DNA of 64,000 bases, taken from positions 124,001 to 188,000 of the IMG/VR virus record IMGVR_UViG_3300032322_002561. One strand, 5' to 3'. Positions 6,059 to 52,744 of the stretch are shown piece by piece. The notes beneath the pieces were generated by a model. That model was not told the DNA's origin. It saw only the letters and a list, made by a program, of their open reading frames with translations, and did not search any database. The position numbers were made by a program, and so were the translations under genes. The number at the start of each line of letters is the position of its first letter. Position 1 is the stretch's first letter.

Positions 6059-6089
6059 GCACTTATGTATCTGTGTTTGCTAGTGATTA

Positions 6090-6584: not shown

Positions 6585-6590
6585 GTAAAA

Positions 6591-7187
6591 TTATTTGCGT
6601 CCAATTACCATGAATCTTGTGTATTCGGTTTCGGGATCACGTAAACGCATACGTCCATGATATAAAACTTTGCTAAGTGGAAAACGGTCCACTATGTCTT
6701 GTGTGCTTTCAAAATTCTTGTTTGGATCATGATCTCGCGCTTGCATGGCCACCAAGGTGCCCGAGGGTATGTTCAAGAACCAAGCTCGACCAGGCATGTC
6801 AGTAAGGCTGGTATTGATCACACAGCCCTGATCGCCTAGCTGTCTATAATCTAGCCGGTTGCTGTCAGCCAACATATATTCTGCATTGTCGACGCCCACA
6901 CGATCCAGTATCTTCTTGCTGCTTGATAAAAATTTCTTGTTTTTTTCTACCAGGACGATTTTGTCTGCACTGATTCGGCCTTCCAAGGTCATGTACAAGG
7001 CAGTGTTGCCATACCAGGAACCCAGCATGTAGATGGTTGAGAAACGATCTTGAATGCGTTCCAGTTCTTTCAACAACCAGACTTTGCTGGCTGTGAGATC
7101 GCGTGTGAAACTGCCAGCAAGGCTGTAGCCACTGCTTTCGTCTAGGTTAGACTGGTGCGTAAGGAAGTCTTGGAGTATCACTGCCAT
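6591..7187 (-). CDS. class I SAM methyltransferase with putative cleavable leader (ILQDFL...NLDE)
   Basis: MLGSWYG motif I, INTS, C-terminal YTRFMVIG. Confidence 0.7.
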   Translation of the reverse strand: MAVILQDFLTHQSNLDESSGYSLAGSFTRDLTASKVWLLKELERIQDRFSTIYMLGSWYGNTALYMTLEGRISADKIVLVEKNKKFLSSSKKILDRVGVDNAEYMLADSNRLDYRQLGDQGCVINTSLTDMPGRAWFLNIPSGTLVAMQARDHDPNKNFESTQDIVDRFPLSKVLYHGRMRLRDPETEYTRFMVIGRK

Positions 7188-7784: not shown

Positions 7785-7899
7785 TTTCTTTTAACCTTTG
7801 ACGATAAATGTGCAAGGCCTCGGTGAGATTCGCAGCCTCTATAACTTCGACTCGTTTACTGCCGTCGGTATTGGTGTGGGTAAATGTATAAGTTTTCAT
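7777..7899 (-). CDS. 40-aa small protein MKTYTFTHTNTDGSKRVEVIEAANLTEALHIYRQRLKESA
   Basis: Fills the gap with overlaps to both neighbours; translated by hand. Confidence 0.6.
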   Translation of the reverse strand: MKTYTFTHTNTDGSKRVEVIEAANLTEALHIYRQRLKESA

Positions 7900-9995
7900 A
7901 GTGTCATGCTACGTGGTTGTCCAAACACACGAATGGCTGCTTGTAATTGACGACGAAATGGTTCACCACTGCGATCATATTCAATCATGAGCCAGTTGCC
8001 CAGGCGATCTTGCACAAGTCCATATTCTTGTGCGGTACGGGCACTGTCCACTGTGAAGTAGTGCAGACGTCGAGCTCGTGGTTTACCGGGTTGTTGTTCA
8101 CGTACCAATGTAAGTTTGGCCACTGCCTGTTGCACGTCTTGTGGAAGTTTTTGCAAGGGTATTGGTACTTGTGTATATTGTCCAGTGGCAGAGTCGGTGT
8201 GAACCAGGATCATGGTACCATTGGGTTTTTTGGTAAATCTATAACCCAGGCGTTGCATGTCATTGCGTAGATCGGGTATTAGGCCTTGGGGATCACCGCG
8301 CACAATAAGCGTGATCATGTTAAGGGCTTTTTGTATGGCTAGATCTTGTCCAGGCAATTTGGGTTGTGGTTCCATGGCTCCGGGCAATGGAACGATTTCC
8401 TCTTGTAGCATACTATACAATGCACGGAACACTGATTCTTTTGTACCTGTTTTCATAACTCTTGGATCCCATGGTGGTGTTTGACTTCTGGTAGGAAACT
8501 TTAAAACTGTTGCGTCTGTTGGTTGTGGTGTAGCAGGTGTTGTGGATTGCGGTATGTTGACCACGTTGCTGCCACCACGCAGCGGTAGCTCGGATTGTGT
8601 TGGTTGCGGCGTTATTGGTTCTGCAAACAGGTCGCCTTGTTCGGGGTCGGCAGTTAGATCTTTTGCCAGTTTGTCTAATGCCGGGGATCGTGTTGGTTCG
8701 GCCTTGACCTTGGGAGTTGGTTTACGTGCTTTGCGACGTTGGACTGGTTTTTCTTTACCGGTAGCAACTGCTGGTGTAGTGTCTGGTTCTGCTGGTGTGG
8801 CAGGTTTCTTTTTTGGCGCAGCTTTGGATCTCACAGCTGGCTTTTCATCAGACTTTGGTTTGGGAGTAGGCAATGCAGGCTTCTTACCAGCGGCAATGTC
8901 TGCGGCTGTGTCTTTGGTGTCTGTGGGAGTCATACCTTGATCTTTGGCCCAGGTATCAAGTTCTTGGAAACGTCGTTCTTTGTCTTGTAGATCAGCCACC
9001 AATTCGGCCTGTTGTTGACGCAGTTGGCGTTCTTGTGCCAAGAGATCTCGTATGTCTTCGCGATCCTGTGCCTGCGTTTTGCGATAGTCAAAAATCAAGG
9101 CTTCAAGGTCGCTTTGTGCTTCAGGATTTTCAGCTCGTAGTTGGCGCATGATTCTCTGCGTTCTAGGATTGTCAAAATCTGTTTCTCTTTTTTCAAGCAC
9201 CGTGCTCTTGCCTAACTGCACAGTGCGGTCAGGAGGCAAAGGCTTTTGGGGAGTGCGTAAGCGGTGCATGACAATGGTTTGTTCAATGCGTTTGGCCACG
9301 GCTTGGGCTGTATCTGCATCTTCTTGTTTGACAGCTTCTTGAAACTTTTCCAACAAGGGCTTGATTTCGGGATATATGTCATCAAAGCTGGTGATTTTAT
9401 TGGTCAAGGCCTTGACCACTTGATTGGTATTGTATATTTTCAAACGATTCCGAATGGTGTAATATGCACCCAGCGTAAATGCTGTGCCGCCCAAGATTGC
9501 AACAGCCAAGGCATCTCGTAAGGCATTGTCAAGAAAAGGATCTACTGCTTCCAGTGTTCGGGTGGGTGGTTTTATACGATCTATTCTTGGTGCAATGTTG
9601 GCTGTGACATCAGTAGCCGCCGGTGCTGTGCCGTATTTGGCTTGTTTTTTCTTTTCTTTGCTGAGTTTTTGTTGTGCGATCAAAGGAGCTAGCCTGCGAT
9701 CAAGATCGGCCAACTGTGCTCGCAGTTGTGGTAGTTGGCTTGGCTTGTATGGTATACCATAGATTTTGCTGGCCTGTTTGATAGCATCCTCGTAGTCCAA
9801 TACTATGCCTTCACGACCAGCATCTCGCATGGCCATGGCAGCTGCTTTGTACAGCAGTTGATTGGCAGTGATTTCTGGACCTACTTTGACTTCTTCCACA
9901 GGCACACAGTTGGGCACCTGACGATCGCCTTTTTTCTTCATGCCAGCTTGGCGGTAACCCTTCCAGCAACGTTCAGATAAATCTTGAAACTTCAT
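7896..9995 (-). CDS. multi-module putative head-cargo polyprotein
   Basis: Leader MKFQDLSE; CWKGY...PNCVP peptide; coiled-coil and Pro/Ala/Lys segments separated by [LV]xE. Confidence 0.65.
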   Translation of the reverse strand: MKFQDLSERCWKGYRQAGMKKKGDRQVPNCVPVEEVKVGPEITANQLLYKAAAMAMRDAGREGIVLDYEDAIKQASKIYGIPYKPSQLPQLRAQLADLDRRLAPLIAQQKLSKEKKKQAKYGTAPAATDVTANIAPRIDRIKPPTRTLEAVDPFLDNALRDALAVAILGGTAFTLGAYYTIRNRLKIYNTNQVVKALTNKITSFDDIYPEIKPLLEKFQEAVKQEDADTAQAVAKRIEQTIVMHRLRTPQKPLPPDRTVQLGKSTVLEKRETDFDNPRTQRIMRQLRAENPEAQSDLEALIFDYRKTQAQDREDIRDLLAQERQLRQQQAELVADLQDKERRFQELDTWAKDQGMTPTDTKDTAADIAAGKKPALPTPKPKSDEKPAVRSKAAPKKKPATPAEPDTTPAVATGKEKPVQRRKARKPTPKVKAEPTRSPALDKLAKDLTADPEQGDLFAEPITPQPTQSELPLRGGSNVVNIPQSTTPATPQPTDATVLKFPTRSQTPPWDPRVMKTGTKESVFRALYSMLQEEIVPLPGAMEPQPKLPGQDLAIQKALNMITLIVRGDPQGLIPDLRNDMQRLGYRFTKKPNGTMILVHTDSATGQYTQVPIPLQKLPQDVQQAVAKLTLVREQQPGKPRARRLHYFTVDSARTAQEYGLVQDRLGNWLMIEYDRSGEPFRRQLQAAIRVFGQPRSMTL

Positions 9996-10828
9996 TTTTT
10001 CTTGTTGCCCCAGTTGGCGGCACCTTTCTTACGACATTGCACAAGGGCACCCGATGCATAAGCTGACGGCCAGACCTTGTAACGACTTTTTACTTTTTGA
10101 TAGCAGGCGTCTTGTTTTTCATCAACTTGATCTCGGTTGACATGTTTTTCTAAACGATCAATAGCACCCTTCATGTCTTCGCGACCTTGCCGGGCTGCGG
10201 CCTGACGCTTTGCTTCTATTTCGTCGTGTTTGCGTTCGCGTTCAGCGGCAGCACGTCTAAATTTTTCCAGTGCAGTTTGACCTTTGCCTTCATCCATGTC
10301 ACGCTGACGACGCTTGCCAAAGTATCGTTGTATGGCAGGATCATCACGATCCACTGCTACCAGGCGCTCGGGACTGATATACCAGCCTTTACCGTCACGA
10401 TCTAGTATGCGAACTCTACGCTCGCTGGGATCACCACTCATGCGGAACACTTCCCCATATTCGCCATCCTGACTGTCACGCACATAATCACCGTCTCGCA
10501 AGCGGCTATCTTCGTCATCATACCAGTCATCGTCGTCTGTGTATTGTTCTTTTACTTTGGTGGCCACATTTTTAGCGGCTCCTCTACGTTCTGGATCGGG
10601 ATCTTCTCTGCGCTTCTTGGCCGCAGCTGACGCACGACCTTTTTTGCCCAGGGCATGTGCCTTGCTCTGTGGCAGGCATTTTGGTTTGCCTTCTGATTCT
10701 GATCCTCGGGCACAACTGCCACGGATTTTACCATCGGGGCCAAAACGCACCCATTTTTCCTTGAACCACTTGCGTAGGTTTTCTTCAACGGGGTCAACAG
10801 TGTTTTCAAATAAATCAGTCAAAATCAT
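9992..10828 (-). CDS. putative head-cargo polyprotein of basic Cys-paired peptides and an SH3/KOW-like module
   Basis: Leader MILTDLFE; junctions VEE/NLRKW, VKE/QY, MDE/GK, VDE/KQDAC. Confidence 0.65.
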   Translation of the reverse strand: MILTDLFENTVDPVEENLRKWFKEKWVRFGPDGKIRGSCARGSESEGKPKCLPQSKAHALGKKGRASAAAKKRREDPDPERRGAAKNVATKVKEQYTDDDDWYDDEDSRLRDGDYVRDSQDGEYGEVFRMSGDPSERRVRILDRDGKGWYISPERLVAVDRDDPAIQRYFGKRRQRDMDEGKGQTALEKFRRAAAERERKHDEIEAKRQAAARQGREDMKGAIDRLEKHVNRDQVDEKQDACYQKVKSRYKVWPSAYASGALVQCRKKGAANWGNKKK

Positions 10829-10859: not shown

Positions 10860-11447
10860 TTAACGCCCAGTCCACTGTGCAATCATGCTGGCATCACCCG
10901 AATATATGCTGCGACCCGGTCTCAAGGCCTTTATGCTGCGGCGTCCCGACTGTATGGGGAAAGTGTATGTGATCGTGTTGCGAGTTTCATGCACTATTTC
11001 GTCACCGGGCTGGGGGTTGTAATCCTGTTGAGACTGTTTGGCGATTCCGCTCACTTCCACACCAGGTATGCGGTTTAACTTTAACCACATGGCCTGCCCA
11101 TGCTTGGTTTGTGTTTTGCCGGCTCTCAGCGTTAATTTTAATATGCTGAGTGCTATGCCATACAGGGCCAAGCCCAGACCCTGTCCACGATAGTCAGGAT
11201 CAGTAGCCACAGTTTCCACACGATAACTGTCTAGCATATCTCCTGTGGGTAGCACATCTAATTCAGCTACCAAACTGTTTTGATCAAAGATCATGATTTG
11301 TTTGAGATCGCCCTCGTGTTGTACGGCATAACTGTAGCCACTGCCGCCGGGCAAAGGTCGGGCACCACGAGGGGTCTGCATGGGTGCAAGAGTATCCTTG
11401 TCGCCAAAGTCACCCTGTGGTATACGAGCTATTTCCATGATTTTCAT
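10860..11447 (-). CDS. GNAT-family acetyltransferase
   Basis: DPDYRGQGLGLALY acetyl-CoA motif, QTKHGQAMW; leader MKIMEI. Confidence 0.8.
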   Translation of the reverse strand: MKIMEIARIPQGDFGDKDTLAPMQTPRGARPLPGGSGYSYAVQHEGDLKQIMIFDQNSLVAELDVLPTGDMLDSYRVETVATDPDYRGQGLGLALYGIALSILKLTLRAGKTQTKHGQAMWLKLNRIPGVEVSGIAKQSQQDYNPQPGDEIVHETRNTITYTFPIQSGRRSIKALRPGRSIYSGDASMIAQWTGR

Positions 11448-12328
11448 GCTGGTTCCTGAACAGCCATAGACTGTAAACTCTGGCTGGCAATATTTACGTC
11501 AAATCCTTTGTTGACAAACCACTGTATCAATGTCAGACGTTGGTCATGGGATAAACTCTGCACCACATCTCTATGCACTGCCGATATCAAGTTTGTGGGC
11601 ACACTGTACCACTTGTCCAACATATTGTGCTCGATGTCTGCTTGGGTGATGTAGTATGTATCTGCCAACGACAAGTCTGATTTGGCTGTGATTTCAGCGG
11701 CAGTAATACAGTTATAAAAGTTGTGCGCAATCAAACTGTAAAAAATAAATTCAGATTCCCAATAATCAAACGGTTTTGATACTTCGTTGAAAAGATAGTC
11801 TATATCAAAACTCACACAGTGTTGAGCAATTACAGTGTTCATTACAAACGGAGTCAGGACTTCGTATGTGTGTGATGTAGAATTGAGACCAAGGATCTTG
11901 GCTACACTATCTAGCCAGGTTTGTCTGGGTCCAGTGGCACACACATCAGTTATGATGGGTCTGCCATTCAAGCAAGGCCAGTTTGACAATGATTGCTGAC
12001 GCCAGAAAAAATTCTTGCTGTCCAAGACCATGTAACGTTCATTTGAGATCAACTGTGATGCCATGAGTTTTAACAACTGTTGTCTACGATAACCGTGCCG
12101 ATCGGGTCGATGATAGTGTGTTTCTGGTAACAAAGTTGGAGACAGTTTTAATGTGTGTCGATGATAGAATGGAGTTAATTTTTCTCTCCAAATTTCTAAA
12201 TCACTTTGGTCCTGAACAATGATCCAGTGCGTGATAGGATTTGTAACAAAAAGATCAATACTGTGAGCTTGAAACAACAGTTGATTCAAGTCACTCAACT
12301 GTGATACAGTTACAACATCCTGAATCAT
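11444..12328 (-). CDS. putative glycosyltransferase-like protein (paralog family)
   Basis: GYRRQQLLKL, VLDSKN, TPFVM, SEFIFY. Confidence 0.55.
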   Translation of the reverse strand: MIQDVVTVSQLSDLNQLLFQAHSIDLFVTNPITHWIIVQDQSDLEIWREKLTPFYHRHTLKLSPTLLPETHYHRPDRHGYRRQQLLKLMASQLISNERYMVLDSKNFFWRQQSLSNWPCLNGRPIITDVCATGPRQTWLDSVAKILGLNSTSHTYEVLTPFVMNTVIAQHCVSFDIDYLFNEVSKPFDYWESEFIFYSLIAHNFYNCITAAEITAKSDLSLADTYYITQADIEHNMLDKWYSVPTNLISAVHRDVVQSLSHDQRLTLIQWFVNKGFDVNIASQSLQSMAVQEPA

Positions 12329-12504
12329 GATTTGACTTCTCTCACGTTGCTGACTATACTGTCAACGCCATATTGTGCTCTAAGCAGGCGTTTGGCCAAT
12401 TCATAATTGCGAGCAACCACCTGTGTGTCAATCAAGGTGGCACTGTTTTTAAGTTTGACTCTTGCATGAAAAGTCTTGAGATTTTCCAATTCTTTGACTT
12501 TCAT
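12325..12504 (-). CDS. small protein (MKVKELE...)
   Basis: ATGA overlaps with both neighbours; start at 12504 preferred. Confidence 0.65.
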   Translation of the reverse strand: MKVKELENLKTFHARVKLKNSATLIDTQVVARNYELAKRLLRAQYGVDSIVSNVREVKS

Positions 12505-15500
12505 TTCTTTTTGGATCTTCCTGACTTCATGTTGGCACACCAGTGATACATTTTGGCTTTCTCACCACTGGCATTTTTAGCTCGTTGACGTAGGCTTGTA
12601 ACTGAGCCATTGCAACTGGCCCCCGCACGTTTTACACGTCCAGGACGGCTCTTGCCTTTGACCTTGCCATCTGCAAAGTTTTCATTGACGTCATCACCTA
12701 GCTTGCGAGCCATTTGAATCTGCTGGGTCATGTTTTCTATGTCATGCTGATCAATGGCTTGCCCAATAGCGCTGCGAGATTTCAGCGAACGTACCACTGG
12801 CTCCACGGGTTCCACACGGTCCATGGATTTTTTCTTGATGACGGGTCTTGGTGGCACAGCACCTGCACCTGATACAGGATCTATGGCCTCGGCTACAATT
12901 CGGGTTCTAAGGAGTCCTGGTGGCATGCCCTCTTGTTCTTGTTGAGCTATCCAGGCACGCACTTCGTCAGCTGTGGCGTTACGCATGAAATGTATCACAC
13001 GGTCAGGATCATCATCCAGAACCAACTCGTAGTTCTGTCGCCGTGGCTCAAAGTTCTGTGCCACATCTGTGTTGACATCCTGCACACCCAGTCTGCGTTG
13101 TACGTCCACACTATCTCTTTGATCATCGGCGGCCTGCTGACCTTTTCTGTAGCCATAGTCAGCAGTGTCGTTGGGCAAGTCTTTCATCTTGAGCCACCGA
13201 TCAAACACACGACTGGCTTCCTGATCACTGTTGGCATGGAATCGGTCAACTACTCGCAAGTCTACAGTGCGTTGATCCACAATTTCATAGTTGTATTGAG
13301 TTGCTGTTGCGGGTTTCTTGACAATACGTTTGGCCACTTGTGCTCTGGGGCTGACTTTGGGCTCTGGCGTCTCATCAGGCCTGCGATATATGTTCCAGTC
13401 CAAGGACCGTTCTCCATATTCGTATTGGACCCGTTGCGTGGCTTTGTCAATGTCAGAAGCACGCATGGTCAGGAGCATTTTGCCCGTTGCATCAAACACA
13501 TCAAACCAGGGCTGTTTGATGCGCACATCAAGCTCATTAATGTCCCGACCGTATTGTCTCAAGAAAAGATCATAGGCTGAGTCATAGTCTTTAGCATACA
13601 GTGTGCCAACGATTCCGTCAGGGCTGTCTTTGTTGTCTCTGCGATAGACTTCGTATTCGTCTTTGCCTGTGCCAGGCAACTCTTTCTGTAGCACAGTATC
13701 AGCCCATTGTTTCTTTAACTGTTCTTTGTTGATGGTACCTGCTGAAAACTCCGAGAACAAGCGAAGTTGGTCCGCATATTGTTCGTTGTCTTGGGTAACC
13801 AACTTGTATAGTTTCTTGGCATACTCCTGGCGTTCGGCACTGGGATCACCGGCTATGGCCATGGCTCGGGCAAAACGCAACATGGTATTTTCTAATATGC
13901 CGATTTCTTCATCGCCTTTGGCCAACCAGTCGCCTCCGGGGCTACGGAATTCCACATAGCCATCTTGTAAATGTGCTGACGTATACTTGCTGGTGCCCAC
14001 ACCTTTTTGCAGTTCTCGGTAGGCCAACTCAGTGAGTCCATGACGCAACAATTCTACCACACCGGCTGGATCACTGCGTCCACCTTTGATGTTTTGTTTT
14101 AACTTGTCCAAGGCCGACGCACAATAGGTGTTAGCTGTACGACCAAACTGCTGTTGCACATACTTGTCGCCCATGAACAGGATCAACTTTACATAGTCTA
14201 TACCGACACTATCGTTGGCGTCTTCAGATTTGATCCGAGGCAAGCTCACGCCCATGTGCAGGCCTGTGGAACTATTGGTATAGGCGTTGCCACCGTTGGG
14301 ATCATTGGCCCAGTCTACCACTGCCTTTAATTTTTCTATGGCCATCAGCAAGGGCATGGGTGGGCTGACTATTTCAAGACCCATTTCTTCACTCTTGTCA
14401 TCGGGATCCAGGCTGCCATCGGGTTCTATGATCCAGGTGCCTTCTCTGCGTGCGGCACTGTGATAATTGGTGCTGACTTTGACAGGCATGTCCACTGCAT
14501 CTTGCAAGCTACTACCAATGTCGTCCCAATCACGGCTACCATTGTTGCTCTGGGCATCCATGTTCCACACAGGCCAGTCCAAGTTGTATTCGTTGGCAAT
14601 GTCACTCATCCAACGCAGTCCGACATCTGAAAAGAAGCTGTCACTGTCAGGACTATAGCTGTCACGGAAATCGTCCAGGGCCTGATCATAATAGCCGTCT
14701 TGTTTACGTATGCTGGTTTCTACTTCTTCGTCTAGGATGGCGTCGGCATCATCCACGGCTTCCATGTAAGTCCTGTAGTCAGGATTCTGTTCAGCAAAAG
14801 CTTCTTGTTCAGCTGAGGTCGTAAATTTGGGTGCGTCTGAACCCAGTCTAAATATCTTTTCGGCTTGATCGTCAGTGAGTTCCATGCCATCTGTTAGCAC
14901 GGCCAGTATACGCTCGCCCATGGGCACTTCGTCGAGATGCTGTTCACGCACTAGGTCTTCGGCTTCGTTGCCAAAATCTTCACGCACCCGCTCATCGTAC
15001 CAGTTCATGTAGGTTTCGTCTAAGTCGTTTTCCAGTCTGCTGACTCCGCGATCACTGAGTCCAAACCCATATTCATCGTTACTGAAAAACTCTATAACCT
15101 GCTGTATGCTGTAGGCACGCTCGTCGTAGTCGTAGTCGGGCTCAGGATCCATCTCATCACTTTCACCCTGTGTGTCACGGAATATGAGTTCAGCTTCAAA
15201 ACCAGCACGTATGCCCTTGGCTGCATCCGACGTGGCAAACTTTTCCAAGGCCGTGGGACTCATTTTGACTTCGTCAAGATCATCTTCATCTAGTTGTTTA
15301 CCTTGTGCTCGCGCTATGGCATCTTGCCCGGCAACAAAATCTTTTGCCGCAATGCCTTGGCCGGCTGACTGGCGTTGTTTGAGTCCTGGCAATAGTGGCA
15401 AGCCTTTTTTCTCGTGCGACTTCAGTTGTGCTTGCAATCGTTGTTGTAGAGCTGGTGTATCATAGAACAGGGCATCCACAGCATCTAGGATATAGACCCA

Positions 15501-17867
15501 GGGTGCGGCACTGTCGCTTTGTATGCTACGAGTGTCACCGGTCTGTAGATCCTGGATGTCCATGCTGTCTATGGCCAGTGGTCCAGCTACACCAGATCTG
15601 ATCATGTCTACTGGGCGCACCACAAAGTTGGCTGACTCACGACTGCGACGGTTTGTTAGCCGTACTTCATAGGTGGTGGGATTAATTTCGTCTACCAGTT
15701 CAGCACGCCATCCGTGTTGTGTTTCAGACTCGCCTTGTGCTGACTCGTCTACATGCCCATTCATGCCAAACTGATTGGCTGGAGCACGTTGATTGCGTGG
15801 GTCAATGTATTCATAGGGGTCGTCTTTGAACTGTGCCAGCTCTTGAGCCAGGCGTTCTTCCAGGGTGCTTTCGCGCAGGTTCACAGTTTTCATCAACAAG
15901 CCAGGTCGTCCTTGGCTGTCAGTTTTGAGTGCCATTTTGTTGGCTTGTCGACCAACTTCACCAGGCCGTATGTCTTGAGTCAAGGCCATGCTGTAGCGTG
16001 GATCTTTAGCCTGCTTTTTTGTGGGAATATATCCACTGGCATTCTCAGCCATTTTCCGTCTCATCTGTTGTGCCAGCTCATAATTTTGTAAAAATTCTAG
16101 TTCATTACGAGTCATTGGTTTATTGGCTACTTTTTTTGCTCTCAAAAATCGATAGTAGTCGTCTTTGTCTTTTTGACTTTGGTTGACGGCTATTTTTAGT
16201 TCTTCGTTTTGTTGGAACTGTTTGTCAAATTCTGCTTTTTTACGATAATATTCTTTTTTGTAGGCTTCAAAGTCAGCGGCCGCCTGTTCGGCACTTTGTG
16301 GTGGCACACGCGGTGCTGGTGGCAAAGTGCCCTGACGTTTTTGCATGCGATACAGCCAACTTTGATTTTGTGCATTGGCATCACCGCCCAGGGCGCGACT
16401 GTAGTTTATGATCTCTTGACGGAGATCTTCCTGAGCACCAGTCCAACCCATGCGTTTGAGTGTCTGTGCTGTGCGTGCCGCATCTACTGCACCACCAAGA
16501 GCTTGTCCTATTGTGCGATCTTGTGCTTGTGCACCACCGGCAGCCAGTGCAGCGGTCAAGGCACCGGCAGCCAACTTGCTTTTGATACCTTCGTCAACAC
16601 TTTCTTTTTCAAAGTATTCAGGGTAGGCATCGGTAAAGTCACGCATGATGATGCCGGCCACAGCATGTGCTTCGTTTTCCCAGTCACTGCCGGTTTCCCC
16701 GGCATCTGCAGGCAAGGGTTCAATTTCATGCTGGCGGCAGTGTGCCAGTTCATGTGCCGTGGTGCGCATGATGTCCAAGATATGTCGATTGGGCAGGCTC
16801 ACGTGCAAGGTATGTGTTTCAGGGTCAAATCTACCAAAGCTGGTGTTGCCTTCACTCCAGGCAGCATCAGAATGCAATTCTATCACAGGCAGTTTTTCAA
16901 TGCCCAGACGCTTGGCCACATAACGAACAAACCGTGATATGATTTTTTTGGTCAGTGGTGTTTCACTGAGAAACATTCTAGTTGATGGGCTGACCCCGTC
17001 CGGAGTAGAAGCTTCACGTATGTCCTGGCTCTCGCCACCACCGTCCCCTCCACCACCTTCTGAGCCGGCAGCATGATCTTGCCCAGCATAGCCAAAACCT
17101 GGATACCAGTAACCACCAAATGCACCGTAGCGAAACTTTTTCTTTTTGGCTTTCTTTCGGCGTTCGTTTAAGCTGAGTTCGCGATCCTTGAGTTCGTTGC
17201 GACGATCAAACAGGCGTTGGATATAGCTCTGACTGCGCAACATCTTGTAGGCCAAGTTTTCTGGACCAAATTCTCCGTTGGTTTCCAGTCCGGCCTTGCG
17301 CATCTGTTTGACTTTTTCTATGGTGGCTGTGACCTGTTCAAGGCTGTCACTCTCAATGGCCTGTTCAACTCTAGCACCAATGTCTTCGTACTTGTGTTGC
17401 ACGCTCATGTCGTCAATCTTGGCACGACGTCTTTTTGGCACTGAGATCCAGTCATCATTGAGCACGCTGTAGATGCCCTGACTCACGTGTGGTTGATCGG
17501 CATCTTGCACATACAGTTCCACATCATAGCCACCTATGCGAATGTCATGTTCATCGTTGTATTGATATTTTTTGGCATCAAACAGCTCGCGATAGACTTC
17601 GTCTTCGGGAACCTGCACCACTAGATGTAGATCAATGTCACTGTGTGGAGCATAACTGTAGGCGGCATTGCTGCCGCTGAGCGTGATGTCTTGGATTTGC
17701 AGATCGCTTACGCCAAGAAATTCTTGGAAATCTGCCGCAATTGCCAACAGTTTTTCACGCACTTCAGGAAGCAGTTTTTCGTCACTGCCAAAAATCCGTG
17801 GATTTAAGTTGTCGTGAAACTTTACAGCATCAGCAAGATTATAGGTCTGCAGCTCATGGATGTTCAT
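12501..17867 (-). CDS. 1788-aa polyvalent protein: Pol-beta-type nucleotidyltransferase, HExxH metallopeptidase, COOH-NH2 amidoligase and small modules
   Basis: GSNA...SDIDLH...VELYVQ; TTAHELAH...ENEA; GFEAEL...DGSL...LEIVSPP...STGLHMGVS...VEFRSPG. Confidence 0.8.
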   Translation of the reverse strand: MNIHELQTYNLADAVKFHDNLNPRIFGSDEKLLPEVREKLLAIAADFQEFLGVSDLQIQDITLSGSNAAYSYAPHSDIDLHLVVQVPEDEVYRELFDAKKYQYNDEHDIRIGGYDVELYVQDADQPHVSQGIYSVLNDDWISVPKRRRAKIDDMSVQHKYEDIGARVEQAIESDSLEQVTATIEKVKQMRKAGLETNGEFGPENLAYKMLRSQSYIQRLFDRRNELKDRELSLNERRKKAKKKKFRYGAFGGYWYPGFGYAGQDHAAGSEGGGGDGGGESQDIREASTPDGVSPSTRMFLSETPLTKKIISRFVRYVAKRLGIEKLPVIELHSDAAWSEGNTSFGRFDPETHTLHVSLPNRHILDIMRTTAHELAHCRQHEIEPLPADAGETGSDWENEAHAVAGIIMRDFTDAYPEYFEKESVDEGIKSKLAAGALTAALAAGGAQAQDRTIGQALGGAVDAARTAQTLKRMGWTGAQEDLRQEIINYSRALGGDANAQNQSWLYRMQKRQGTLPPAPRVPPQSAEQAAADFEAYKKEYYRKKAEFDKQFQQNEELKIAVNQSQKDKDDYYRFLRAKKVANKPMTRNELEFLQNYELAQQMRRKMAENASGYIPTKKQAKDPRYSMALTQDIRPGEVGRQANKMALKTDSQGRPGLLMKTVNLRESTLEERLAQELAQFKDDPYEYIDPRNQRAPANQFGMNGHVDESAQGESETQHGWRAELVDEINPTTYEVRLTNRRSRESANFVVRPVDMIRSGVAGPLAIDSMDIQDLQTGDTRSIQSDSAAPWVYILDAVDALFYDTPALQQRLQAQLKSHEKKGLPLLPGLKQRQSAGQGIAAKDFVAGQDAIARAQGKQLDEDDLDEVKMSPTALEKFATSDAAKGIRAGFEAELIFRDTQGESDEMDPEPDYDYDERAYSIQQVIEFFSNDEYGFGLSDRGVSRLENDLDETYMNWYDERVREDFGNEAEDLVREQHLDEVPMGERILAVLTDGMELTDDQAEKIFRLGSDAPKFTTSAEQEAFAEQNPDYRTYMEAVDDADAILDEEVETSIRKQDGYYDQALDDFRDSYSPDSDSFFSDVGLRWMSDIANEYNLDWPVWNMDAQSNNGSRDWDDIGSSLQDAVDMPVKVSTNYHSAARREGTWIIEPDGSLDPDDKSEEMGLEIVSPPMPLLMAIEKLKAVVDWANDPNGGNAYTNSSTGLHMGVSLPRIKSEDANDSVGIDYVKLILFMGDKYVQQQFGRTANTYCASALDKLKQNIKGGRSDPAGVVELLRHGLTELAYRELQKGVGTSKYTSAHLQDGYVEFRSPGGDWLAKGDEEIGILENTMLRFARAMAIAGDPSAERQEYAKKLYKLVTQDNEQYADQLRLFSEFSAGTINKEQLKKQWADTVLQKELPGTGKDEYEVYRRDNKDSPDGIVGTLYAKDYDSAYDLFLRQYGRDINELDVRIKQPWFDVFDATGKMLLTMRASDIDKATQRVQYEYGERSLDWNIYRRPDETPEPKVSPRAQVAKRIVKKPATATQYNYEIVDQRTVDLRVVDRFHANSDQEASRVFDRWLKMKDLPNDTADYGYRKGQQAADDQRDSVDVQRRLGVQDVNTDVAQNFEPRRQNYELVLDDDPDRVIHFMRNATADEVRAWIAQQEQEGMPPGLLRTRIVAEAIDPVSGAGAVPPRPVIKKKSMDRVEPVEPVVRSLKSRSAIGQAIDQHDIENMTQQIQMARKLGDDVNENFADGKVKGKSRPGRVKRAGASCNGSVTSLRQRAKNASGEKAKMYHWCANMKSGRSKKK

Positions 17868-17882
17868 AAGCTGTATTTACCG

Positions 17883-18749
17883 TTATTTTGTGCTTGTGGC
17901 TTCTTCCAGAACCGCAGGTTGTGTGCTGTCAGCAGGATCGCTAGATGCCAAGACTTCGGGTTCCTGTATGTCAACCGGCTGTTTTGCAGCCTCGTGAGCA
18001 CCGCCCACTTTGGGTTGAACCAGCGCATGCAAATCTTGATACAGTTTGTCCTGCGTGGCACCATCAAATATGTATGTGCCAATGTGTTTGAGCAAGATAC
18101 GTTTGTCAATGTAGACCTGACCACCTAGATCACGCCAGTTTTCACAAAAGGTCCAGTCTTCACTATAGTAACGACCTTCGCGCACGGCTGTGTCAAAATA
18201 GGTCTTCATGTAGGGATTGAGCTCTTCTGGCAAGCCAATGTCATTGGTAAACGGTTTCACAGCCGGATGTGCATCCAATTTTTCAAACACTTCGCGCTTG
18301 ATCAACAAGAATCCAGTACCAGTCTTGGTTACTTCAACCAAGTTGTCTTCGCCTTGTTCTTTGCCAGGAATACCATTCACACACCATTTGACCGGCAACG
18401 ATTTCATGGGATATAATCCGCCAATCACATCAACTCTGCGATCCAACAGCACCAACAAGTGCCATGGTTCCCAACCAATATCAGCATCAATAAACATAAG
18501 ATGTGTGCTGCCTTGTGTGTGCAAGAACTTGGCTGTGAGTGTGTTTCTAGCACGACTAATCAAGCTCTCATTGGTCATAGTTTCCACGGTCCAGTCAATG
18601 CCCAGTTGCCGACAGGCATTACTCCACTTGATAAAACTCATAAAAGTTTGCTCACTCAACATGCCACCATAACAGGGCATGCAAATGTGTACTCGTGTGG
18701 TTTTTAGATATTCTAGATCAACATTGATTTGTATCTGCTGTTCAGGCAT
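17883..18749 (-). CDS. GT-A fold glycosyltransferase-like protein
   Basis: SLISRARN, FIDADI (DxD), GTGFLLI, SEDWTFC. Confidence 0.75.
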   Translation of the reverse strand: MPEQQIQINVDLEYLKTTRVHICMPCYGGMLSEQTFMSFIKWSNACRQLGIDWTVETMTNESLISRARNTLTAKFLHTQGSTHLMFIDADIGWEPWHLLVLLDRRVDVIGGLYPMKSLPVKWCVNGIPGKEQGEDNLVEVTKTGTGFLLIKREVFEKLDAHPAVKPFTNDIGLPEELNPYMKTYFDTAVREGRYYSEDWTFCENWRDLGGQVYIDKRILLKHIGTYIFDGATQDKLYQDLHALVQPKVGGAHEAAKQPVDIQEPEVLASSDPADSTQPAVLEEATSTK

Positions 18750-18799: not shown

Positions 18800-19798
18800 T
18801 TATTTTTTACGACCAGCGCAGTGCGCTTTTTGGCTAAAGCCCCTGGGGTTGTTGCAGTTGATTGAACGCTTGTATTTGGCAGACCACTTTTCGTCTATGT
18901 AGTCATCGCTCTCATTGTATGTGGCGGCCCAGCCTTGATTTTCGTCCATTTCTTTTTGTTTTTTAGCCACGTAATTTGTGATACGGCTCTTGGTCACACT
19001 GTGCTGTGCTTTTGTGGGATTGGCATAATTGCCTGGTTTGGAGTAAACCAGCTTATCGCCGCGATATATTTCTACTCGATCAGGATGATATTTGATAGTG
19101 TACCCTTGATACGCAAAAGATTTCACATCGTAGGTAGAAGTTGACACTGGTCGAGTCATGGTTTTTTTCTGTTTGGCCACTGCTTCGGGATTGGAGGGGA
19201 ATGATTCTTCCATGCCCAATATAGCAGTGTCTAGTAACTTTACTACATTTTGTGCCAATGCAGGATTCTTTTGTGTGATGGGGTACAGGCTCATGACAAG
19301 AGCCTGTTTGCGTCGGTCATTTAATCGAGGCCATGCCGCACGTATTTCTGTAGCCGAAGTCATACCAGGACCAAATTCCACAGTGGGCAAATAGGCCATA
19401 TAAGCATGTTGAGCAAATGGTGCTAGATCCTGTTGTCCTTTGTAGGGCTGTAGATAACTGGGCGATCCATCTTTTTTGACGCCACCTGCTTGTGGCGGTT
19501 TGTCAGCATCTTTTTCACTGCGCACAAAGATCAACTGATCGGTTTCAGGGTCAAATCCAGCAGTGATTTCCTTGGCTTGGAACGGGCTTTTGACTTGTAC
19601 AAAATGGCCGGGTTCAACACCGGCCAACTTGGCCAGCTTTTCTTTTACAGCAAATGGAAAAGGTCGTGCTGACGTATCATTTGTGGCTGCCACAAACACT
19701 TCAGCATTGGGGAACGCTTTGCGTGCAGAGTTATACAGGGCATAATGACCTGCATGAAAAGGATGGAACCCACCGGGCATAACGACAATTTGCTTCAT
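18800..19798 (-). CDS. HIGH-family nucleotidyltransferase with C-terminal small modules
   Basis: PGGFHPFHAGH, SATEIR; C-terminal IDE/KWSAKYKRSINCNNP...C. Confidence 0.75.
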   Translation of the reverse strand: MKQIVVMPGGFHPFHAGHYALYNSARKAFPNAEVFVAATNDTSARPFPFAVKEKLAKLAGVEPGHFVQVKSPFQAKEITAGFDPETDQLIFVRSEKDADKPPQAGGVKKDGSPSYLQPYKGQQDLAPFAQHAYMAYLPTVEFGPGMTSATEIRAAWPRLNDRRKQALVMSLYPITQKNPALAQNVVKLLDTAILGMEESFPSNPEAVAKQKKTMTRPVSTSTYDVKSFAYQGYTIKYHPDRVEIYRGDKLVYSKPGNYANPTKAQHSVTKSRITNYVAKKQKEMDENQGWAATYNESDDYIDEKWSAKYKRSINCNNPRGFSQKAHCAGRKK

Positions 19799-20362: not shown

Positions 20363-21067
20363 TTATAGCCGTTTGATCACGGGCACGCTTTTGCGTATTG
20401 CACCAGGTGCCAGTATGGCCAGCATGGTTTCGTACTGTAGATTGTTGTGTTCGATATAAAAGTAACGCTGACACCAATCACTGCGCCAGGTCTTGCCAGG
20501 TTGATTCAACCAGTGCCATAAAGCTCGACTGGCTTGTGCCTGTACAGATTCCTGATCTTGTTGAGCCACAATCCAGGCCTTTAATTGCGACTTGGTATCC
20601 AGTGATATCTTGCGCTCGCGGAAAAAAGTTCTATATTTGAATTTTGGATTATTGATCACTATGCTGTCTTTTGGTTTATCTACCACAGCTTGTCTTATAA
20701 CTCTACCAAATTCTACCTGCGGGCAACGATACAAGGCATGGCACAGATTTGCATCGTTGGTATAAACCGTGGCCCAATCCATGCTGACCACCAATTTGAA
20801 CTCGGCTGGCCAATTCAACAATAGGTCTCGAGTGGCGCACAAATTTTCTACTGATTCCTGTGTAAAACACTTGCTCTTGCCATCAGAACGATTATTTAGA
20901 TGTATGCTCCAGCTGCGTCGTAGGTTGATGAATTTGTTCAAGGTTTGCGGGCTAGGCATGCCACGCAAGGCAAAAATTTCAGTTTGTTTAAATGTAAAAG
21001 CGTAACTGTATAGATCATAATACAGTCGATCTCGATGTTCAATCTTGATTGCTAATTGAGTCAACAC
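20363..21067 (-). CDS. hypothetical protein
   Basis: Long ORF in operon order. Confidence 0.65.
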   Translation of the reverse strand: MLTQLAIKIEHRDRLYYDLYSYAFTFKQTEIFALRGMPSPQTLNKFINLRRSWSIHLNNRSDGKSKCFTQESVENLCATRDLLLNWPAEFKLVVSMDWATVYTNDANLCHALYRCPQVEFGRVIRQAVVDKPKDSIVINNPKFKYRTFFRERKISLDTKSQLKAWIVAQQDQESVQAQASRALWHWLNQPGKTWRSDWCQRYFYIEHNNLQYETMLAILAPGAIRKSVPVIKRL

Positions 21068-23362: not shown

Positions 23363-24136
23363 TCAAACTCTATGCTTTTTTATTGCGGCAATTATTTCTG
23401 GAGCAATCTGGGATGGCAAATAGGTACCAAGCCTCACAAACACGTCGCCTTGATTATTGTTGCGATCTCGCAGACCTTGACCACGCAAACGCAACAATGT
23501 GCCGGGTTGAGTTCCTGCTGGAATAGCGGCCGACAACGAGGCATTGGTTATACTGGTAAGATTCAAGGAGCCGCCCAAGATCAAGTCCCACACTGGAACC
23601 TTTTGATCAATTATGAGATTGAGACCGTGTCGTTCCCACTGCTGATGTGGATGCACTCTGAATTGTACTACCAAATCAGATCCACCAGGACCAATTCCAG
23701 CATATTGAACGTTGTCACCGTCATTGATGCCCACGGGTATATCTATAGACACTGTGCTGGTGCCAGACGTGGTGCCAAGATTGACAGTTCTTGAGCCGCC
23801 CAGGGCCACATCATTCAGAGTTATCCATAGTGTCAATCTAACATGACCTGGACCTCTGCGTGACTGATGATGGAAATTTTGTCCAAACATGCTGAACAAA
23901 TCGTTGAAGTCAAACCCAGCATTGCCAAATCCTGCAAAATTGGTTTGTGGATTATCGTAACCAGATCGTCGTTGCGGGTCACTCAAGACATCGTAGGCTT
24001 CTTGAATTTCTTGAAATTGTTTGGTATCACCACCTCGGTCCGGATGGTGTTGTGCAGCCAAACGCCGATAAGCACGTTTTATGTCATCGGCATTGGCTGT
24101 ACGATCTACGCCTAAAGTTTGATAGTAATTTTTCAT
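23363..24136 (-). CDS. DnaJ-class co-chaperone without Zn finger (CbpA-like)
   Basis: J-domain HHPD, G/F region, DnaJ C-terminal LRLRGQG. Confidence 0.9.
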   Translation of the reverse strand: MKNYYQTLGVDRTANADDIKRAYRRLAAQHHPDRGGDTKQFQEIQEAYDVLSDPQRRSGYDNPQTNFAGFGNAGFDFNDLFSMFGQNFHHQSRRGPGHVRLTLWITLNDVALGGSRTVNLGTTSGTSTVSIDIPVGINDGDNVQYAGIGPGGSDLVVQFRVHPHQQWERHGLNLIIDQKVPVWDLILGGSLNLTSITNASLSAAIPAGTQPGTLLRLRGQGLRDRNNNQGDVFVRLGTYLPSQIAPEIIAAIKKHRV

Positions 24137-50634: not shown

Positions 50635-50654
50635 AAAATCCTGTCCTTGTATGC

Positions 50655-50685
50655 TATTTACCAAAACTTAGTAGACCGCTAAATA
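50655..50685. promoter_or_regulatory. back-to-back late promoters of divergent tail genes
   Basis: TATTTA 50655-50660 (minus) and TAAATA 50680-50685 (plus), each followed by SD and ATG. Confidence 0.7.
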
Positions 50686-50704
50686 CACAAGTTCGGAGCA
50701 ATCA

Positions 50705-52735: not shown

Positions 52736-52744
52736 AGACACTAG

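What the first reader, a model, noticed from the sequence alone, without database searches (positions are those of the whole stretch)
12501..17867. 1788-aa protein joining a nucleotidyltransferase, a zincin peptidase and a COOH-NH2 amidoligase
Seen: a Pol-beta-type NTase at about 17163-17867, an HELAH peptidase at about 16590-16961, and an amidoligase with a long acidic insert at about 13680-15269, followed by several degenerate Y(E/D)V...A...A repeats. Established: polyvalent phage proteins combine such conflict domains. Inference: a ligase and peptidase in one chain could be a writer/eraser pair for peptide tags, and the NTase could modify RNA or protein or make decoy nucleotides.
Basis: partly seen in the sequence, partly recalled or inferred. 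Interest (0 to 1): 0.65.

Follow-up and report, generated by a model that had tools for sequence, protein, structure and literature searches.

The report
Jumbo-phage polyvalent multi-enzyme giant protein
One 1788-residue gene of an uncultured jumbo phage strings together a nucleotidyltransferase, a small zinc protease, an ATP-dependent amidoligase and four small repeats. It looks like a new version of the "polyvalent" multi-tool proteins that phages are thought to deliver into bacteria, but its targets are unknown.

Summary
Window 12501-17867 (minus strand) is one 1788-aa ORF.

**Modules found**
- A Pol-beta nucleotidyltransferase (aa 1-235) with all catalytic motifs invariant.
- An HEXXH+E zincin (aa 301-425). 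Its predicted fold matches SPRTN, Wss1, IrrE and ArdC-type peptidases.
- A Pfam Amidoligase_2 domain (aa 862-1400), split by a conserved 211-aa insert of net charge about -43.
- Four degenerate small repeats (aa 1401-1650) and a basic tail.

**Distribution.** More than 850 metagenomic homologs exist. All 120 examined are unnamed or called "hypothetical protein". Many sit on 200-360 kb phage contigs and keep the same module order and gene neighbourhood.

**Variable slots.** Between the fixed modules, relatives carry unrelated cassettes: sigma-70 region 4, GNAT, cytidine deaminase and internal lipoprotein-signal-like segments. This is the signature of phage polyvalent proteins.

**Packaging.** A stand-alone homolog of the ligase module in the cultured jumbo phage Atu_ph07 (gp196) is in the published virion proteome.

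**Best reading.** This is a virion-delivered polyprotein cut into separate effectors by its own zincin. That is inference, not shown.

The "writer/eraser" idea is neither supported nor excluded.

**Novelty.** The architecture is absent from the 2017 polyvalent-protein catalogue, so I rate it a new variant of a known kind, of moderate interest.

The parts
12501..17867 (-). Whole gene: 1788-aa polyvalent protein (P0001)
   Evidence: ORF list and translation. More than 850 homologs; the top 120 keep the same module order.
17163..17867 (-). Module 1, aa 1-235: Pol-beta-superfamily nucleotidyltransferase, made of an NTase core (aa ~30-145) and a C-terminal helical domain (aa 150-235)
   Evidence: phrog_36119 E 3e-38. 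NTP_transf_2 hits 38/38 homologs. G65 S66 / D77 D79 / D115 E117 are invariant. VIA Z 6.0-6.6 to TENT5/FAM46C, DwCdnB and AadA. ESM Atlas: virus-only clusters of 232-254-aa stand-alone proteins. Stand-alone copies occur in cyanophages, Maribacter and Lak phages.
16968..17162 (-). Linker, aa 236-300: Lys run, then an aromatic/Gly-rich motif, then a Gly run. Predicted disordered yet nearly invariant; candidate processing or docking site.
   Evidence: pLDDT 23-35. Many invariant or nearly invariant columns between Y247 and E285. The PDB scFv hits to this stretch are linker-composition artefacts.
16593..16967 (-). Module 2, aa 301-425: minimal gluzincin metallopeptidase (HELAH at aa 372-376 = nt 16740-16754; third ligand E397)
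   Evidence: AF2 pLDDT 78-93 with zincin topology. VIA Z 8.9 to 1oz9, 8.6 to SPRTN 6mdx, 8.5 to Wss1 5xbn, 7.2 to PprI/IrrE, 6.7 to ArdC 6i89. BFVD stand-alone 'IrrE N-terminal-like' phage protein of 122 aa, TM 0.87, 36% identity. Peptidase_M78 is weak, in 15/38 homologs.
16053..16592 (-). Variable slot 1, aa 426-605: here a cassette that begins with a signal-peptide-like hydrophobic segment (aa 428-452, ending in an Ala-x-Ala site), followed by helical, Gln/Lys-rich sequence
   Evidence: Coverage by homologs drops to 31-77 of 120. Other homologs hold sigma-70 region 4 here. Lipobox-like or Ala-x-Ala signal-like segments occur in 26/115.
15798..16052 (-). Conserved segment, aa 606-690, of unknown fold. 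In most homologs it follows the zincin directly.
   Evidence: Covered by 107-115 of 120 homologs. Seen directly after the zincin in the printed homolog segments. No Pfam or PHROG hit.
15285..15797 (-). Variable slot 2, aa 691-861: a cassette with no family match in this protein
   Evidence: Covered by only 16-25 of 120 homologs. At this place homologs carry 150-900-aa inserts with GNAT, DUF6934-like or DUF6886-like segments.
13668..15284 (-). Module 3, aa 862-1400: Amidoligase_2 (glutamine-synthetase-like carboxylate-amine ligase). Motifs: E891-x-E893, E1148/D1150/S1152, E1165-x-V-S-P, H1204, E1306-F-R1308.
   Evidence: PF12224 above the gathering score. Motifs invariant in 37 homologs and in two stand-alone jumbo-phage proteins. 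N-termini of RsoM2USA ORF26 and Atu_ph07 gp196 align at aa ~864. The AF2 core is poorly modelled, so the fold was not confirmed.
14538..15170 (-). Acidic helical insert inside the ligase, aa 900-1110 (net charge -43)
   Evidence: Length 211 and net charge -40 to -47 in all 37 aligned homologs; the equivalent region of Atu_ph07 gp196 is also strongly acidic. AF2 helices with pLDDT 85-91.
12918..13667 (-). Four degenerate ~45-55-aa repeats, aa 1401-1650 (strand-strand-helix-strand units)
   Evidence: hhalign r1-r2 93%, r3-r4 79%. AF2 pLDDT 77-88. No significant PDB or Atlas match.
12501..12917 (-). C-terminal tail, aa 1651-1788: Pro-rich stretch, then a strongly basic end (net +13 in the last 48 aa) with two Cys and a His
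   Evidence: Composition. Conserved in about half of the homologs. No family hit.

Best explanation
The gene encodes a polyvalent protein of an uncultured jumbo phage whose complete genome is about 340 kb. It is one polypeptide that carries several unrelated enzymes.

The most likely course is as follows. The protein is made late and packaged in the virion. It enters the host with the DNA. It is then cut at its flexible, conserved linkers by its own HEXXH gluzincin (SprT/IrrE/ArdC-like).

Cutting would free four things:
- a Pol-beta nucleotidyltransferase that nucleotidylates a host target;
- lineage-specific cassettes;
- an ATP-dependent Amidoligase_2 enzyme that joins an amine or amino acid to a carboxylate on a host protein, envelope precursor or metabolite;
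- a repeat-plus-basic-tail module that probably provides binding.

Shown: domain identities, intact catalytic motifs, conserved order, cassette variability, and virion association of a ligase homolog in another phage.

Inferred: packaging of this protein, self-cleavage, and every substrate.
For: Domain identity and intact active sites.

One polypeptide with the same order in the 120 best homologs, on contigs up to 361 kb.

Conserved neighbourhood in two 320-337 kb contigs (DnaJ, ClpA/B-like, cytidylyltransferase-like, phrog_1574 protein, giant gene).

Combinatorial cassettes at two slots and at the C-terminus (sigma70_r4 E 1.6e-17, GNAT 1e-8, deaminase 4e-8). This is the defining trait of polyvalent proteins (PMC5512222). 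That paper identifies the zincin MPTase as the hub domain and predicts that it processes the polypeptide.

Each module matches the size of free-standing phage proteins:
- NTase, 232-254 aa;
- zincin, 122 aa;
- ligase, whose N-terminus aligns at aa 864.

Internal lipoprotein- or secretory-signal-like segments directly after the zincin in 26/115 homologs would work only at a newly made N-terminus.

The stand-alone ligase homolog Atu_ph07 gp196 (BLASTP E 4e-24) lies two genes from the portal gene. It is in the virion proteome with 14 peptides and 30% coverage (PMC6102473 Suppl. Table S5).

The gene shares a minus-strand block with holin-like, spanin and endolysin genes.
Against: There is no direct evidence that this protein is packaged or cleaved.

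Its immediate neighbours are chaperone and auxiliary genes rather than head genes. Pfam searches found no portal, prohead protease or terminase in the 236-kb record, though it is only about 68% complete and several control searches did not ring.

Stand-alone NTase homologs sit in replication or early regions of cyanophages, so that module is not intrinsically a virion protein.

The glutamine-synthetase-like fold of the ligase could not be confirmed structurally: the core has pLDDT 30-50 and there was no PDB match.

Zincin fold scores (Z 8.5-8.9) are only middling on the tool's own scale.
Confidence: 0.5

Rival explanations
1. It is a cytoplasmic, non-packaged multi-enzyme or polyprotein. It is made during infection and acts inside the infected cell on host takeover, the envelope or metabolite modification, without being delivered by the virion.
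For: The neighbourhood is chaperones (DnaJ, ClpA/B-like), a cytidylyltransferase-like gene, GNAT, and in relatives ferritin and dCMP deaminase, rather than head genes. Stand-alone NTase homologs lie in replication regions. In small phages, Amidoligase_2 genes lie in early-gene cassettes (PMC3890496).
Against: The Atu_ph07 ligase homolog is virion-associated and lies next to the portal gene. Cassette-type variability and the zincin hub fit the injected polyvalent class.
Confidence: 0.25
2. The amidoligase adds a peptide or amino-acid tag to target proteins and the fused zincin removes it, while the NTase acts separately.
For: Small phages pair Amidoligase_2 with a glutamine-amidotransferase gene (PMC3890496 and PMC10580990). 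I recall, but could not read here, that the amidoligase survey those papers cite predicts the partner to be a peptidase. No GATase is found in this 236-kb record, so the fused zincin could in principle take that role. Ligase and zincin co-occur in nearly all of the 120 best homologs.
Against: The zincin is separated from the ligase by two hypervariable slots and is coupled more tightly to the NTase. NTase+zincin two-domain proteins exist without a ligase (A0A8S5T042). Its nearest relatives are endopeptidases of the IrrE/SprT/ArdC kind, not isopeptidases. The ligase also occurs alone, without a zincin in the same chain, in Atu_ph07 and RsoM2USA.
Confidence: 0.12
3. The ligase, and perhaps the NTase, belong to a DNA or nucleotide hypermodification pathway of the phage.
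For: Amidoligase and amidotransferase genes co-occur with thymidine-hypermodification clusters in viral metagenomes (PMC8989533). A radical SAM gene lies about 11 kb away in the window. In relatives, a dCMP deaminase and a radical SAM/SPASM gene lie 6-8 kb downstream of the giant gene.
Against: No ThyA-family (dUMP hydroxymethylase-type) gene and no GATase are found in the 236-kb record. The ligase is fused to a protease and an NTase rather than placed in a nucleotide-metabolism cluster. A homolog is a virion component.
Confidence: 0.05
4. It is mainly a structural or scaffolding virion protein whose enzyme-like domains are inactive relics.
For: It is large, has repeats and long low-complexity linkers, and a ligase homolog is found in virions.
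Against: All catalytic motifs of all three enzymes are invariant across homologs down to about 50% identity. No structural-protein fold or PHROG structural family matches.
Confidence: 0.05

Closest known systems
Polyvalent proteins of phages and conjugative elements (Iyer, Burroughs, Anand, de Souza, Aravind 2017; PMC5512222)
   Same: It has several unrelated enzymatic domains in one phage polypeptide. A zincin-like metallopeptidase sits among the modules. Cassettes are swapped combinatorially between close relatives, and include GNAT, which the catalogue lists among polyvalent-protein domains.
   Different: No amidoligase appears anywhere in that paper's text. Its Pol-beta NTases are reported only in conjugative-element proteins fused to ArdC-N. 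No portal or MuF-type head gene was found near this gene in the fragment searched.
Atu_ph07 gp196 (AUZ94978.1) and RsoM2USA ORF26 (AVH84955.1), stand-alone amidoligase proteins of cultured jumbo phages
   Same: They share 30-32% identity over the ligase core. They share the N-terminal motif, have an insert after the first Glu-x-Glu strand (strongly acidic in gp196), and share all catalytic motifs. gp196 is a virion protein.
   Different: They are 500-523-aa single-module proteins with no NTase, zincin or repeats, and their insert is shorter (about 140 aa against 211).
Amidoligase_2 + glutamine amidotransferase cassettes of small phages (LUZ24-like phages, OM43 phages)
   Same: Same Pfam family, PF12224.
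   Different: Those are separate genes of about 385 aa in cassettes that include a GATase gene; in the LUZ24-like phage UFV-P2 this is an early-gene cassette that also holds COOH-NH2_lig and ATP-grasp genes. No such partners were found in this 236-kb record, and here the ligase is fused into a giant protein.
SprT/Wss1/SPRTN, ImmA/IrrE (Peptidase_M78) and the ArdC C-terminal metallopeptidase
   Same: Minimal zincin fold with HEXXH plus a downstream Glu. Z 8.6 (rmsd 3.2, 105 aligned) to SPRTN, 8.5 to Wss1, 7.2 to PprI, 6.7 to ArdC. Stand-alone phage IrrE-like proteins reach 36% identity.
   Different: It does not reach any Pfam threshold: Peptidase_M78 hits only 15/38 homologs at E of 0.004 or worse, and SprT-like 1/38. 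No DNA-binding or repressor partner is evident.
Two-domain Pol-beta NTases: aminoglycoside NTases (AadA, ANT(9), ANT(4')), TENT5/FAM46, CD-NTases
   Same: NTase core plus C-terminal helical domain, with a G-S...D-x-D...D-x-E catalytic set.
   Different: Only weak, tied fold scores (Z about 6) and 12-20% identity. The family is virus-specific. No evidence selects among antibiotic, RNA-tailing or cyclic-nucleotide chemistry.

Membership tests
Polyvalent proteins (Iyer et al. 2017) | Two or more domains of disparate biochemical activity in one polypeptide of a phage or conjugative element | tested here: met
   NTase, zincin and amidoligase in one ORF of an IMG/VR virus record.
Polyvalent proteins (Iyer et al. 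2017) | Combinatorial variation of domains among relatives | tested here: met
   Sigma70_r4, GNAT, deaminase and DUF6934/6886-like inserts at fixed slots in homologs.
Polyvalent proteins (Iyer et al. 2017) | Zincin-like MPTase interspersed between the modules | tested here: met
   HEXXH+E domain between the NTase and the remaining modules.
Polyvalent proteins (Iyer et al. 2017) | Delivered into the host with the DNA (virion-packaged) | not testable with these tools
   Indirect only: the ligase homolog gp196 is in the Atu_ph07 virion proteome.
Polyvalent proteins (Iyer et al. 2017) | Genomic link to head-morphogenesis genes (portal, MuF) | tested here: inconclusive
   No Portal_T4, S77, Gp23 or Terminase_6C hit in the 236-kb record. 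The record is about 68% complete and the Portal_T4, S77 and Gp23 controls did not ring.
Pol-beta nucleotidyltransferase superfamily | h-G-[GS] motif, [DE]-h-[DE] motif and a third carboxylate on the next strand | tested here: met
   G65 S66, D77 D79 and D115/E117 are invariant in 38 sequences.
Pol-beta nucleotidyltransferase superfamily | Profile and fold match | tested here: met
   NTP_transf_2 hits 38/38 homologs, best 1e-5, though below the gathering score in this protein. VIA Z 6.0-6.6 to TENT5C, DwCdnB and AadA.
Gluzincin metallopeptidases (SprT / Peptidase_M78-like) | HEXXH on a helix plus a Glu on the following helix, after a three-stranded sheet | tested here: met
   H372 E373 H376 E397 are invariant. 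Topology in the AF2 model. Z 8.5-8.9 to zincins.
Peptidase_M78 (ImmA/IrrE), Pfam PF06114 | Profile match above the curated threshold | tested here: not met
   No hit in this protein; 15/38 homologs hit at E of 0.004 or worse. This is resemblance, not membership.
Amidoligase_2 (PF12224) | Profile match above the gathering score | tested here: met
   32.4-34.7 bits against a cut-off of 22. Most homologs carry a precomputed PF12224 hit.
Amidoligase_2 (PF12224) | Conserved acidic, His and Arg motifs of the glutamine-synthetase-like active site | tested here: met
   E891/E893, E1148/D1150, E1165, H1204 and E1306/R1308 are invariant; all but the first pair, which lies outside that alignment, are also invariant in the two stand-alone phage proteins. 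That these motifs form the active site is recalled from family knowledge, not tested.
Amidoligase_2 (PF12224) | Glutamine-synthetase-like fold | tested here: inconclusive
   The AF2 core has pLDDT 30-50. No Foldseek, VIA or PDB-profile match.
Amidoligase_2 (PF12224) | Neighbouring glutamine-amidotransferase-like peptidase or AIG2-like partner. The GATase pairing is seen; the rest is recalled from the Pfam description. | tested here: not met
   No GATase_4 or GATase_6 hit in the 236-kb record. AIG2 was not searched.
COOH-NH2_lig (PF14395) | Profile match | tested here: not met
   Not among the Pfam hits for aa 870-1400 at E up to 5. No hit in the genome, but the control did not ring.

The most novel reading that the evidence does not exclude
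A phage delivers from its capsid an ATP-dependent amidoligase that covalently tags host proteins or envelope precursors within the first moments of infection. It is released from a polyprotein by a co-delivered zincin. Its conserved helical insert of net charge -43 acts as a nucleic-acid mimic, for example against restriction or DNA-binding defences. Some relatives additionally release a lipoprotein for export from the same polyprotein.
Probability: 0.15. Interest if true: 0.8.

Novelty: new variant of a known kind. Interest (0 to 1): 0.55.

Why it matters
Polyvalent proteins are proposed to be the first weapons a phage or plasmid fires into a cell, yet almost none has been tested.

This family is large: more than 850 metagenomic members, all 120 examined unnamed or "hypothetical protein". 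It is conserved across an uncultured jumbo-phage clade. It also adds an enzyme class, an Amidoligase_2 carboxylate-amine ligase, that is missing from the published catalogue of polyvalent domains and for which I know of no characterised member or solved structure.

The fixed scaffold with exchangeable slots offers a natural system for studying how phages shuffle effector cassettes.

The internal signal-peptide-like cassettes give a simple, testable prediction of self-processing.

If the ligase modifies host proteins, it would be a new type of phage-delivered post-translational takeover.

Tried and rejected
**Close DNA relatives.** Megablast of the gene against 50,697 phage records found no match. 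tblastn finds only single modules in cultured phages and no full-length relative.

**Sequence searches of the PDB.** The whole protein and three profiles (A1, A2, A3) were searched. Only scFv linker artefacts from the Gly-rich linker came back, and nothing for the ligase even at E of 10.

**Fold searches of the 870-1640 model.** Foldseek and VIA-wide gave no meaningful match. The ligase core is poorly modelled, so this says nothing about its fold.

**Repeats.** The ESM Atlas feature search gave no usable hit. The weak similarities to AcrIE2, PaaB and T7 Gp2 (Z 4.3-5.7) were rejected as too weak.

**Neighbouring NTase in Atu_ph07.** I asked whether gp195, next to the ligase homolog, is the same NTase family as module 1. 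hhalign gave probability 0.1%, so it is not detectably the same; only the G-S...D-x-D motif is shared.

**Paralogs.** None of the modules has a paralog elsewhere in the 236-kb genome.

**Pfam searches of the whole record.** Gp23, Terminase_6C, Portal_T4, Peptidase_S77, ThyA, GATase_4, GATase_6 and COOH-NH2_lig all gave no hit. The record is about 68% complete, and the controls for Gp23, Portal_T4, S77 and COOH-NH2_lig did not ring. One accession recalled from memory (PF18909) turned out to be a different family from the one intended.

**Promoter and terminator scan.** Not above shuffled expectation.

**Sequencing runs.** I did not try to obtain the same information another way and read laying was not used, so there is no expression or read-level evidence.

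**Not used.** The large representative-protein search was not run, because the word search and family scans answered the question. No alternative genetic code was needed.

**Source names.** The listing of cluster members gave only "hypothetical protein".

**Paper not held.** The 2009 amidoligase survey (PMC3268129) is not held. Its content is cited only through later papers or marked as recalled.

Full report

Window 12501-17867 (minus strand) is a single ATG-to-stop ORF of 1788 aa, stored as P0001. The window is part of a one-contig, 236,309-bp IMG/VR virus record. The record is classed as linear and CheckV estimates it about 68% complete. It encodes tail fibres, an endolysin, a spanin, a holin-like protein, DnaJ and a ClpA/B-like ATPase.

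The ORF is not an assembly chimera. A word-indexed search found more than 858 homologs of 1150-2660 aa, many on contigs of 200-361 kb. Each fixed module is covered by at least 109 of the 120 best, in the same order.

**2. The nucleotidyltransferase (aa 1-235)**

- PHROG 36119 matches aa 8-233 at E 3e-38.
- Pfam NTP_transf_2 is below threshold in this protein (E 0.003-0.016) but hits all 38 aligned homologs, best 1e-5. There are weaker hits to the poly(A)-polymerase palm and Polbeta models.
- The superfamily's catalytic set is invariant: G65-S66, D77-x-D79 and D115-x-E117.
- The AF2 model of aa 1-430 has mean pLDDT 71. It gives an alpha/beta core plus a four-helix C-terminal domain.
- Fold matches are all Pol-beta NTases but weak and tied: TENT5C/FAM46C Z 6.6, CD-NTase DwCdnB Z 6.0, AadA Z 6.0.
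- ESM Atlas places the module in virus-only clusters of free-standing 232-254-aa proteins.
- tblastn finds such free-standing copies in cyanophages, Maribacter phages, Caulobacter phage Cr30 and Lak megaphages. In the two neighbourhoods examined (Maribacter phage Molly_1 and Synechococcus phage DSL-LC02) the copy lies among non-structural genes.

The substrate cannot be deduced from any of this.

**3. The peptidase (aa 301-425)**

H372-E373-x-x-H376 and E397 are invariant. The model here is confident (pLDDT 78-93). It shows the zincin topology that PMC5512222 describes: an N-terminal helix, a three-stranded sheet, the HEXXH helix and a Glu-bearing helix.

| Match | Z |
|---|---|
| 1oz9, YbeY-type | 8.9 |
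| SPRTN 6mdx (rmsd 3.2, 105 residues) | 8.6 |
| Wss1 5xbn | 8.5 |
| Lugdulysin | 8.1 |
| PprI/IrrE | 7.2 |
| Anthrax lethal factor catalytic domain | about 7 |
| ArdC 6i89 | 6.7 |

On the tool's own scale these scores are middling. However, the list is coherent and the motif is intact.

In BFVD the module matches free-standing phage proteins annotated as IrrE N-terminal-like (122 aa, TM 0.87, 36% identity) and SprT-like. It also matches a 496-aa NTase+zincin two-domain protein that has no ligase. Pfam Peptidase_M78 is reached only weakly, by 15 of 38 homologs. I therefore call it IrrE/SprT-like and not a member.

**4. The ligase (aa 862-1400)**

Pfam Amidoligase_2 is matched above the gathering score (32-35 bits against 22) over aa 1120-1261. 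Most homologs carry a precomputed PF12224 hit.

The family's motifs are invariant in 37 homologs:
- E891-x-E893 on the first strand;
- W-x-x-E-P-D-x-S;
- G-x-E-x-V-S-P;
- T-G-x-H;
- Y-x-E-F-R-x-x-G-G-D.

All but the first, which lies outside that alignment, are also invariant in two free-standing jumbo-phage proteins.

Between the first strand and the rest lies a 211-aa helical insert. Its length and net charge (-40 to -47) are conserved in every aligned homolog. It is modelled with pLDDT 85-91.

The catalytic core itself was poorly modelled (pLDDT 30-50). No structural or PDB-profile match was obtained. The glutamine-synthetase-like fold therefore rests on Pfam family membership and on what I recall of that family's classification, not on a test made here.

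However, the Pfam family of that name (PF14395) is not the one matched.

**5. Repeats and tail**

Profile-profile comparison of the four units gives 93% probability for r1-r2 and 79% for r3-r4. The remaining pairs are weak but always in the same register. AF2 models each unit as strand-strand-helix(-strand) with pLDDT 77-88. No known fold or family was found. The last 48 residues are strongly basic, at +13.

**6. What kind of protein is this?**

*Variable slots.* Mapping homologs onto P0001 shows a fixed scaffold: NTase, linker, zincin, a conserved segment at aa 606-690, ligase, repeats. Two hypervariable slots interrupt it, at aa ~426-605 and ~691-861, and the C-terminus also varies.

In relatives these places hold unrelated cassettes of 120-900 aa:
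- sigma-70 region 4 (E 1.6e-17);
- GNAT acetyltransferase (E 1e-8);
- a cytidine/dCMP deaminase (E 4e-8);
- DUF6934-like and DUF6886-like segments;
- a possible second metallopeptidase (weak).

Disparate activities in one chain, with combinatorial exchange and a zincin among them, is how Iyer et al. define polyvalent proteins. They propose that the zincin cuts the chain into working units after delivery with the DNA (PMC5512222).

*Evidence that fits processing and delivery.*
- Each module corresponds in size to free-standing phage proteins. The N-termini of the free-standing ligases align exactly where the ligase module begins, at aa ~864.
- In 26 of 115 homologs, including P0001 (aa 428-452), the cassette right after the zincin starts with a classical signal-peptide-like element. 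Nineteen carry a lipobox-like motif and seven an Ala-x-Ala site. Such an element is expected to work only at an N-terminus, which implies cleavage just upstream.
- The linker at aa 236-300 is predicted disordered yet nearly invariant, as expected of a recognition or cleavage site.
- The free-standing ligase homolog of the cultured jumbo phage Atu_ph07 is AUZ94978.1 = gp196 (BLASTP E 4e-24). It lies two genes from the portal gene. It was detected in purified virions with 14 peptides and 30% coverage (PMC6102473 Suppl. Table S5).

*Evidence that weakens it.*
- Nothing shows directly that this protein is packaged or cleaved.
- Its neighbourhood is conserved in two 320-337 kb contigs and consists of DnaJ, ClpA/B-like, cytidylyltransferase-like and phrog_1574 genes, not head genes.
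- Head genes were not found in the incomplete record.
- Free-standing NTase copies are not in structural modules.

**7. Rivals**

*Cytoplasmic polyprotein that is never packaged.* This is the main alternative, at about 0.25.

*Writer/eraser reading.* It has an analogy in the Amidoligase_2 plus glutamine-amidotransferase gene pairs of small phages. No such partner is found here. Three points count against it. The zincin is more tightly linked to the NTase than to the ligase. It occurs with the NTase alone in another phage. It resembles endopeptidases.

*Role in DNA hypermodification.* Metagenomic co-occurrence suggests it (PMC8989533). It is unlikely given the fusion context, the absence of ThyA-type and GATase genes in the record, and virion association of a homolog.

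*Purely structural role.* The invariant active sites argue against it.

**8. Novelty and limits**

The class is known. [quoted passage not shown] No cultured phage in the collection searched has a full-length relative. Sources either leave the homologs unnamed or call them "hypothetical protein". I rate it a new variant of a known kind.

Limits:
- The costly representative search was not needed.

Noticed in passing
window 16512-16586 (aa 428-452 of P0001) and homologs such as P0013, P0009, P0079: An internal signal-peptide-like segment sits directly after the zincin domain in 26 of 115 homologs. Nineteen have a lipobox-like motif ending in Cys and seven have an Ala-x-Ala site. This suggests a lipoprotein or secreted cassette released from inside a giant cytoplasmic polyprotein.
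   Followed up: partly
window 14538-15170 (aa 900-1110): The helical insert in the ligase keeps its length (211 aa) and net charge (-40 to -47) in all 37 aligned homologs. The equivalent region of the virion protein Atu_ph07 gp196 is also very acidic. It may be a nucleic-acid mimic; this was not tested.
   Followed up: partly
window 16968-17162 (aa 236-300): The linker is predicted disordered (pLDDT 23-35) but nearly invariant: a Lys run, then an aromatic/Gly-rich motif, then a Gly run. It also causes spurious PDB hits to scFv antibodies with Gly-Ser linkers.
   Followed up: partly
window 9992-10828 (-) and 7896-9995 (-): Two overlapping ORFs (278 and 699 aa) hit consecutive parts of phrog_727, so they may be one gene split in two. 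Both hold short Cys-containing basic motifs. The C-terminus of the first is DUF5872-like and loosely resembles the basic Cys/His tail of the giant protein.
   Followed up: no
window 21039-23315 (-) and 23363-24136 (-): The phage encodes a ClpA/B-like double-AAA+ ATPase (phrog_4871, E 3e-238; about 40% identity to the Atu_ph07 Clp protein) and a DnaJ. Both are conserved upstream of the giant gene in related 320-337 kb contigs.
   Followed up: partly
window 18800-19798 (-) and 17883-18749 (-): A cytidylyltransferase/adenylyltransferase-like protein (332 aa; only the N-terminal ~60 aa match) and a phrog_1574 protein of unknown function always precede the giant gene in relatives. They may be functionally linked to it.
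   Followed up: no
window 10860-11447 (-) and 11444-12328 (-): A weak GNAT-like ORF and a DUF6492 ORF lie directly downstream of the giant gene. In relative L001 a GNAT follows the giant gene directly, and in another homolog (P0023) a GNAT sits inside the giant protein. This suggests modules move between fused and free states.
   Followed up: partly
window 12325-12540 (-): A 71-aa GTG-start ORF overlaps the last 40 nt of the giant gene. It has no family hit and may not be a real gene.
   Followed up: no
window 24383-24844, 30597-31124, 31124-31750 (all -): Holin-like, Rz-like spanin and endolysin (phrog_181, E 2e-77) genes lie in the same minus-strand block as the giant gene, as does a polynucleotide-kinase-like ORF at 27866-28453.
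   Followed up: no
window 43435-47811 (-): A second giant ORF (1458 aa) has no PHROG match at all. It lies next to tail-fibre genes at 47821-54091.
   Followed up: no
L005 (Atu_ph07) 6001-6993 (-) beside 4491-5993 (+): In Atu_ph07 the free-standing virion amidoligase gp196 lies next to gp195, which is annotated as a nucleotidyltransferase (T4 GC1542). gp195 is a different NTase family from module 1 (hhalign probability 0.1%) and is not listed in the virion proteome. It is a possible independent NTase-ligase association.
   Followed up: partly
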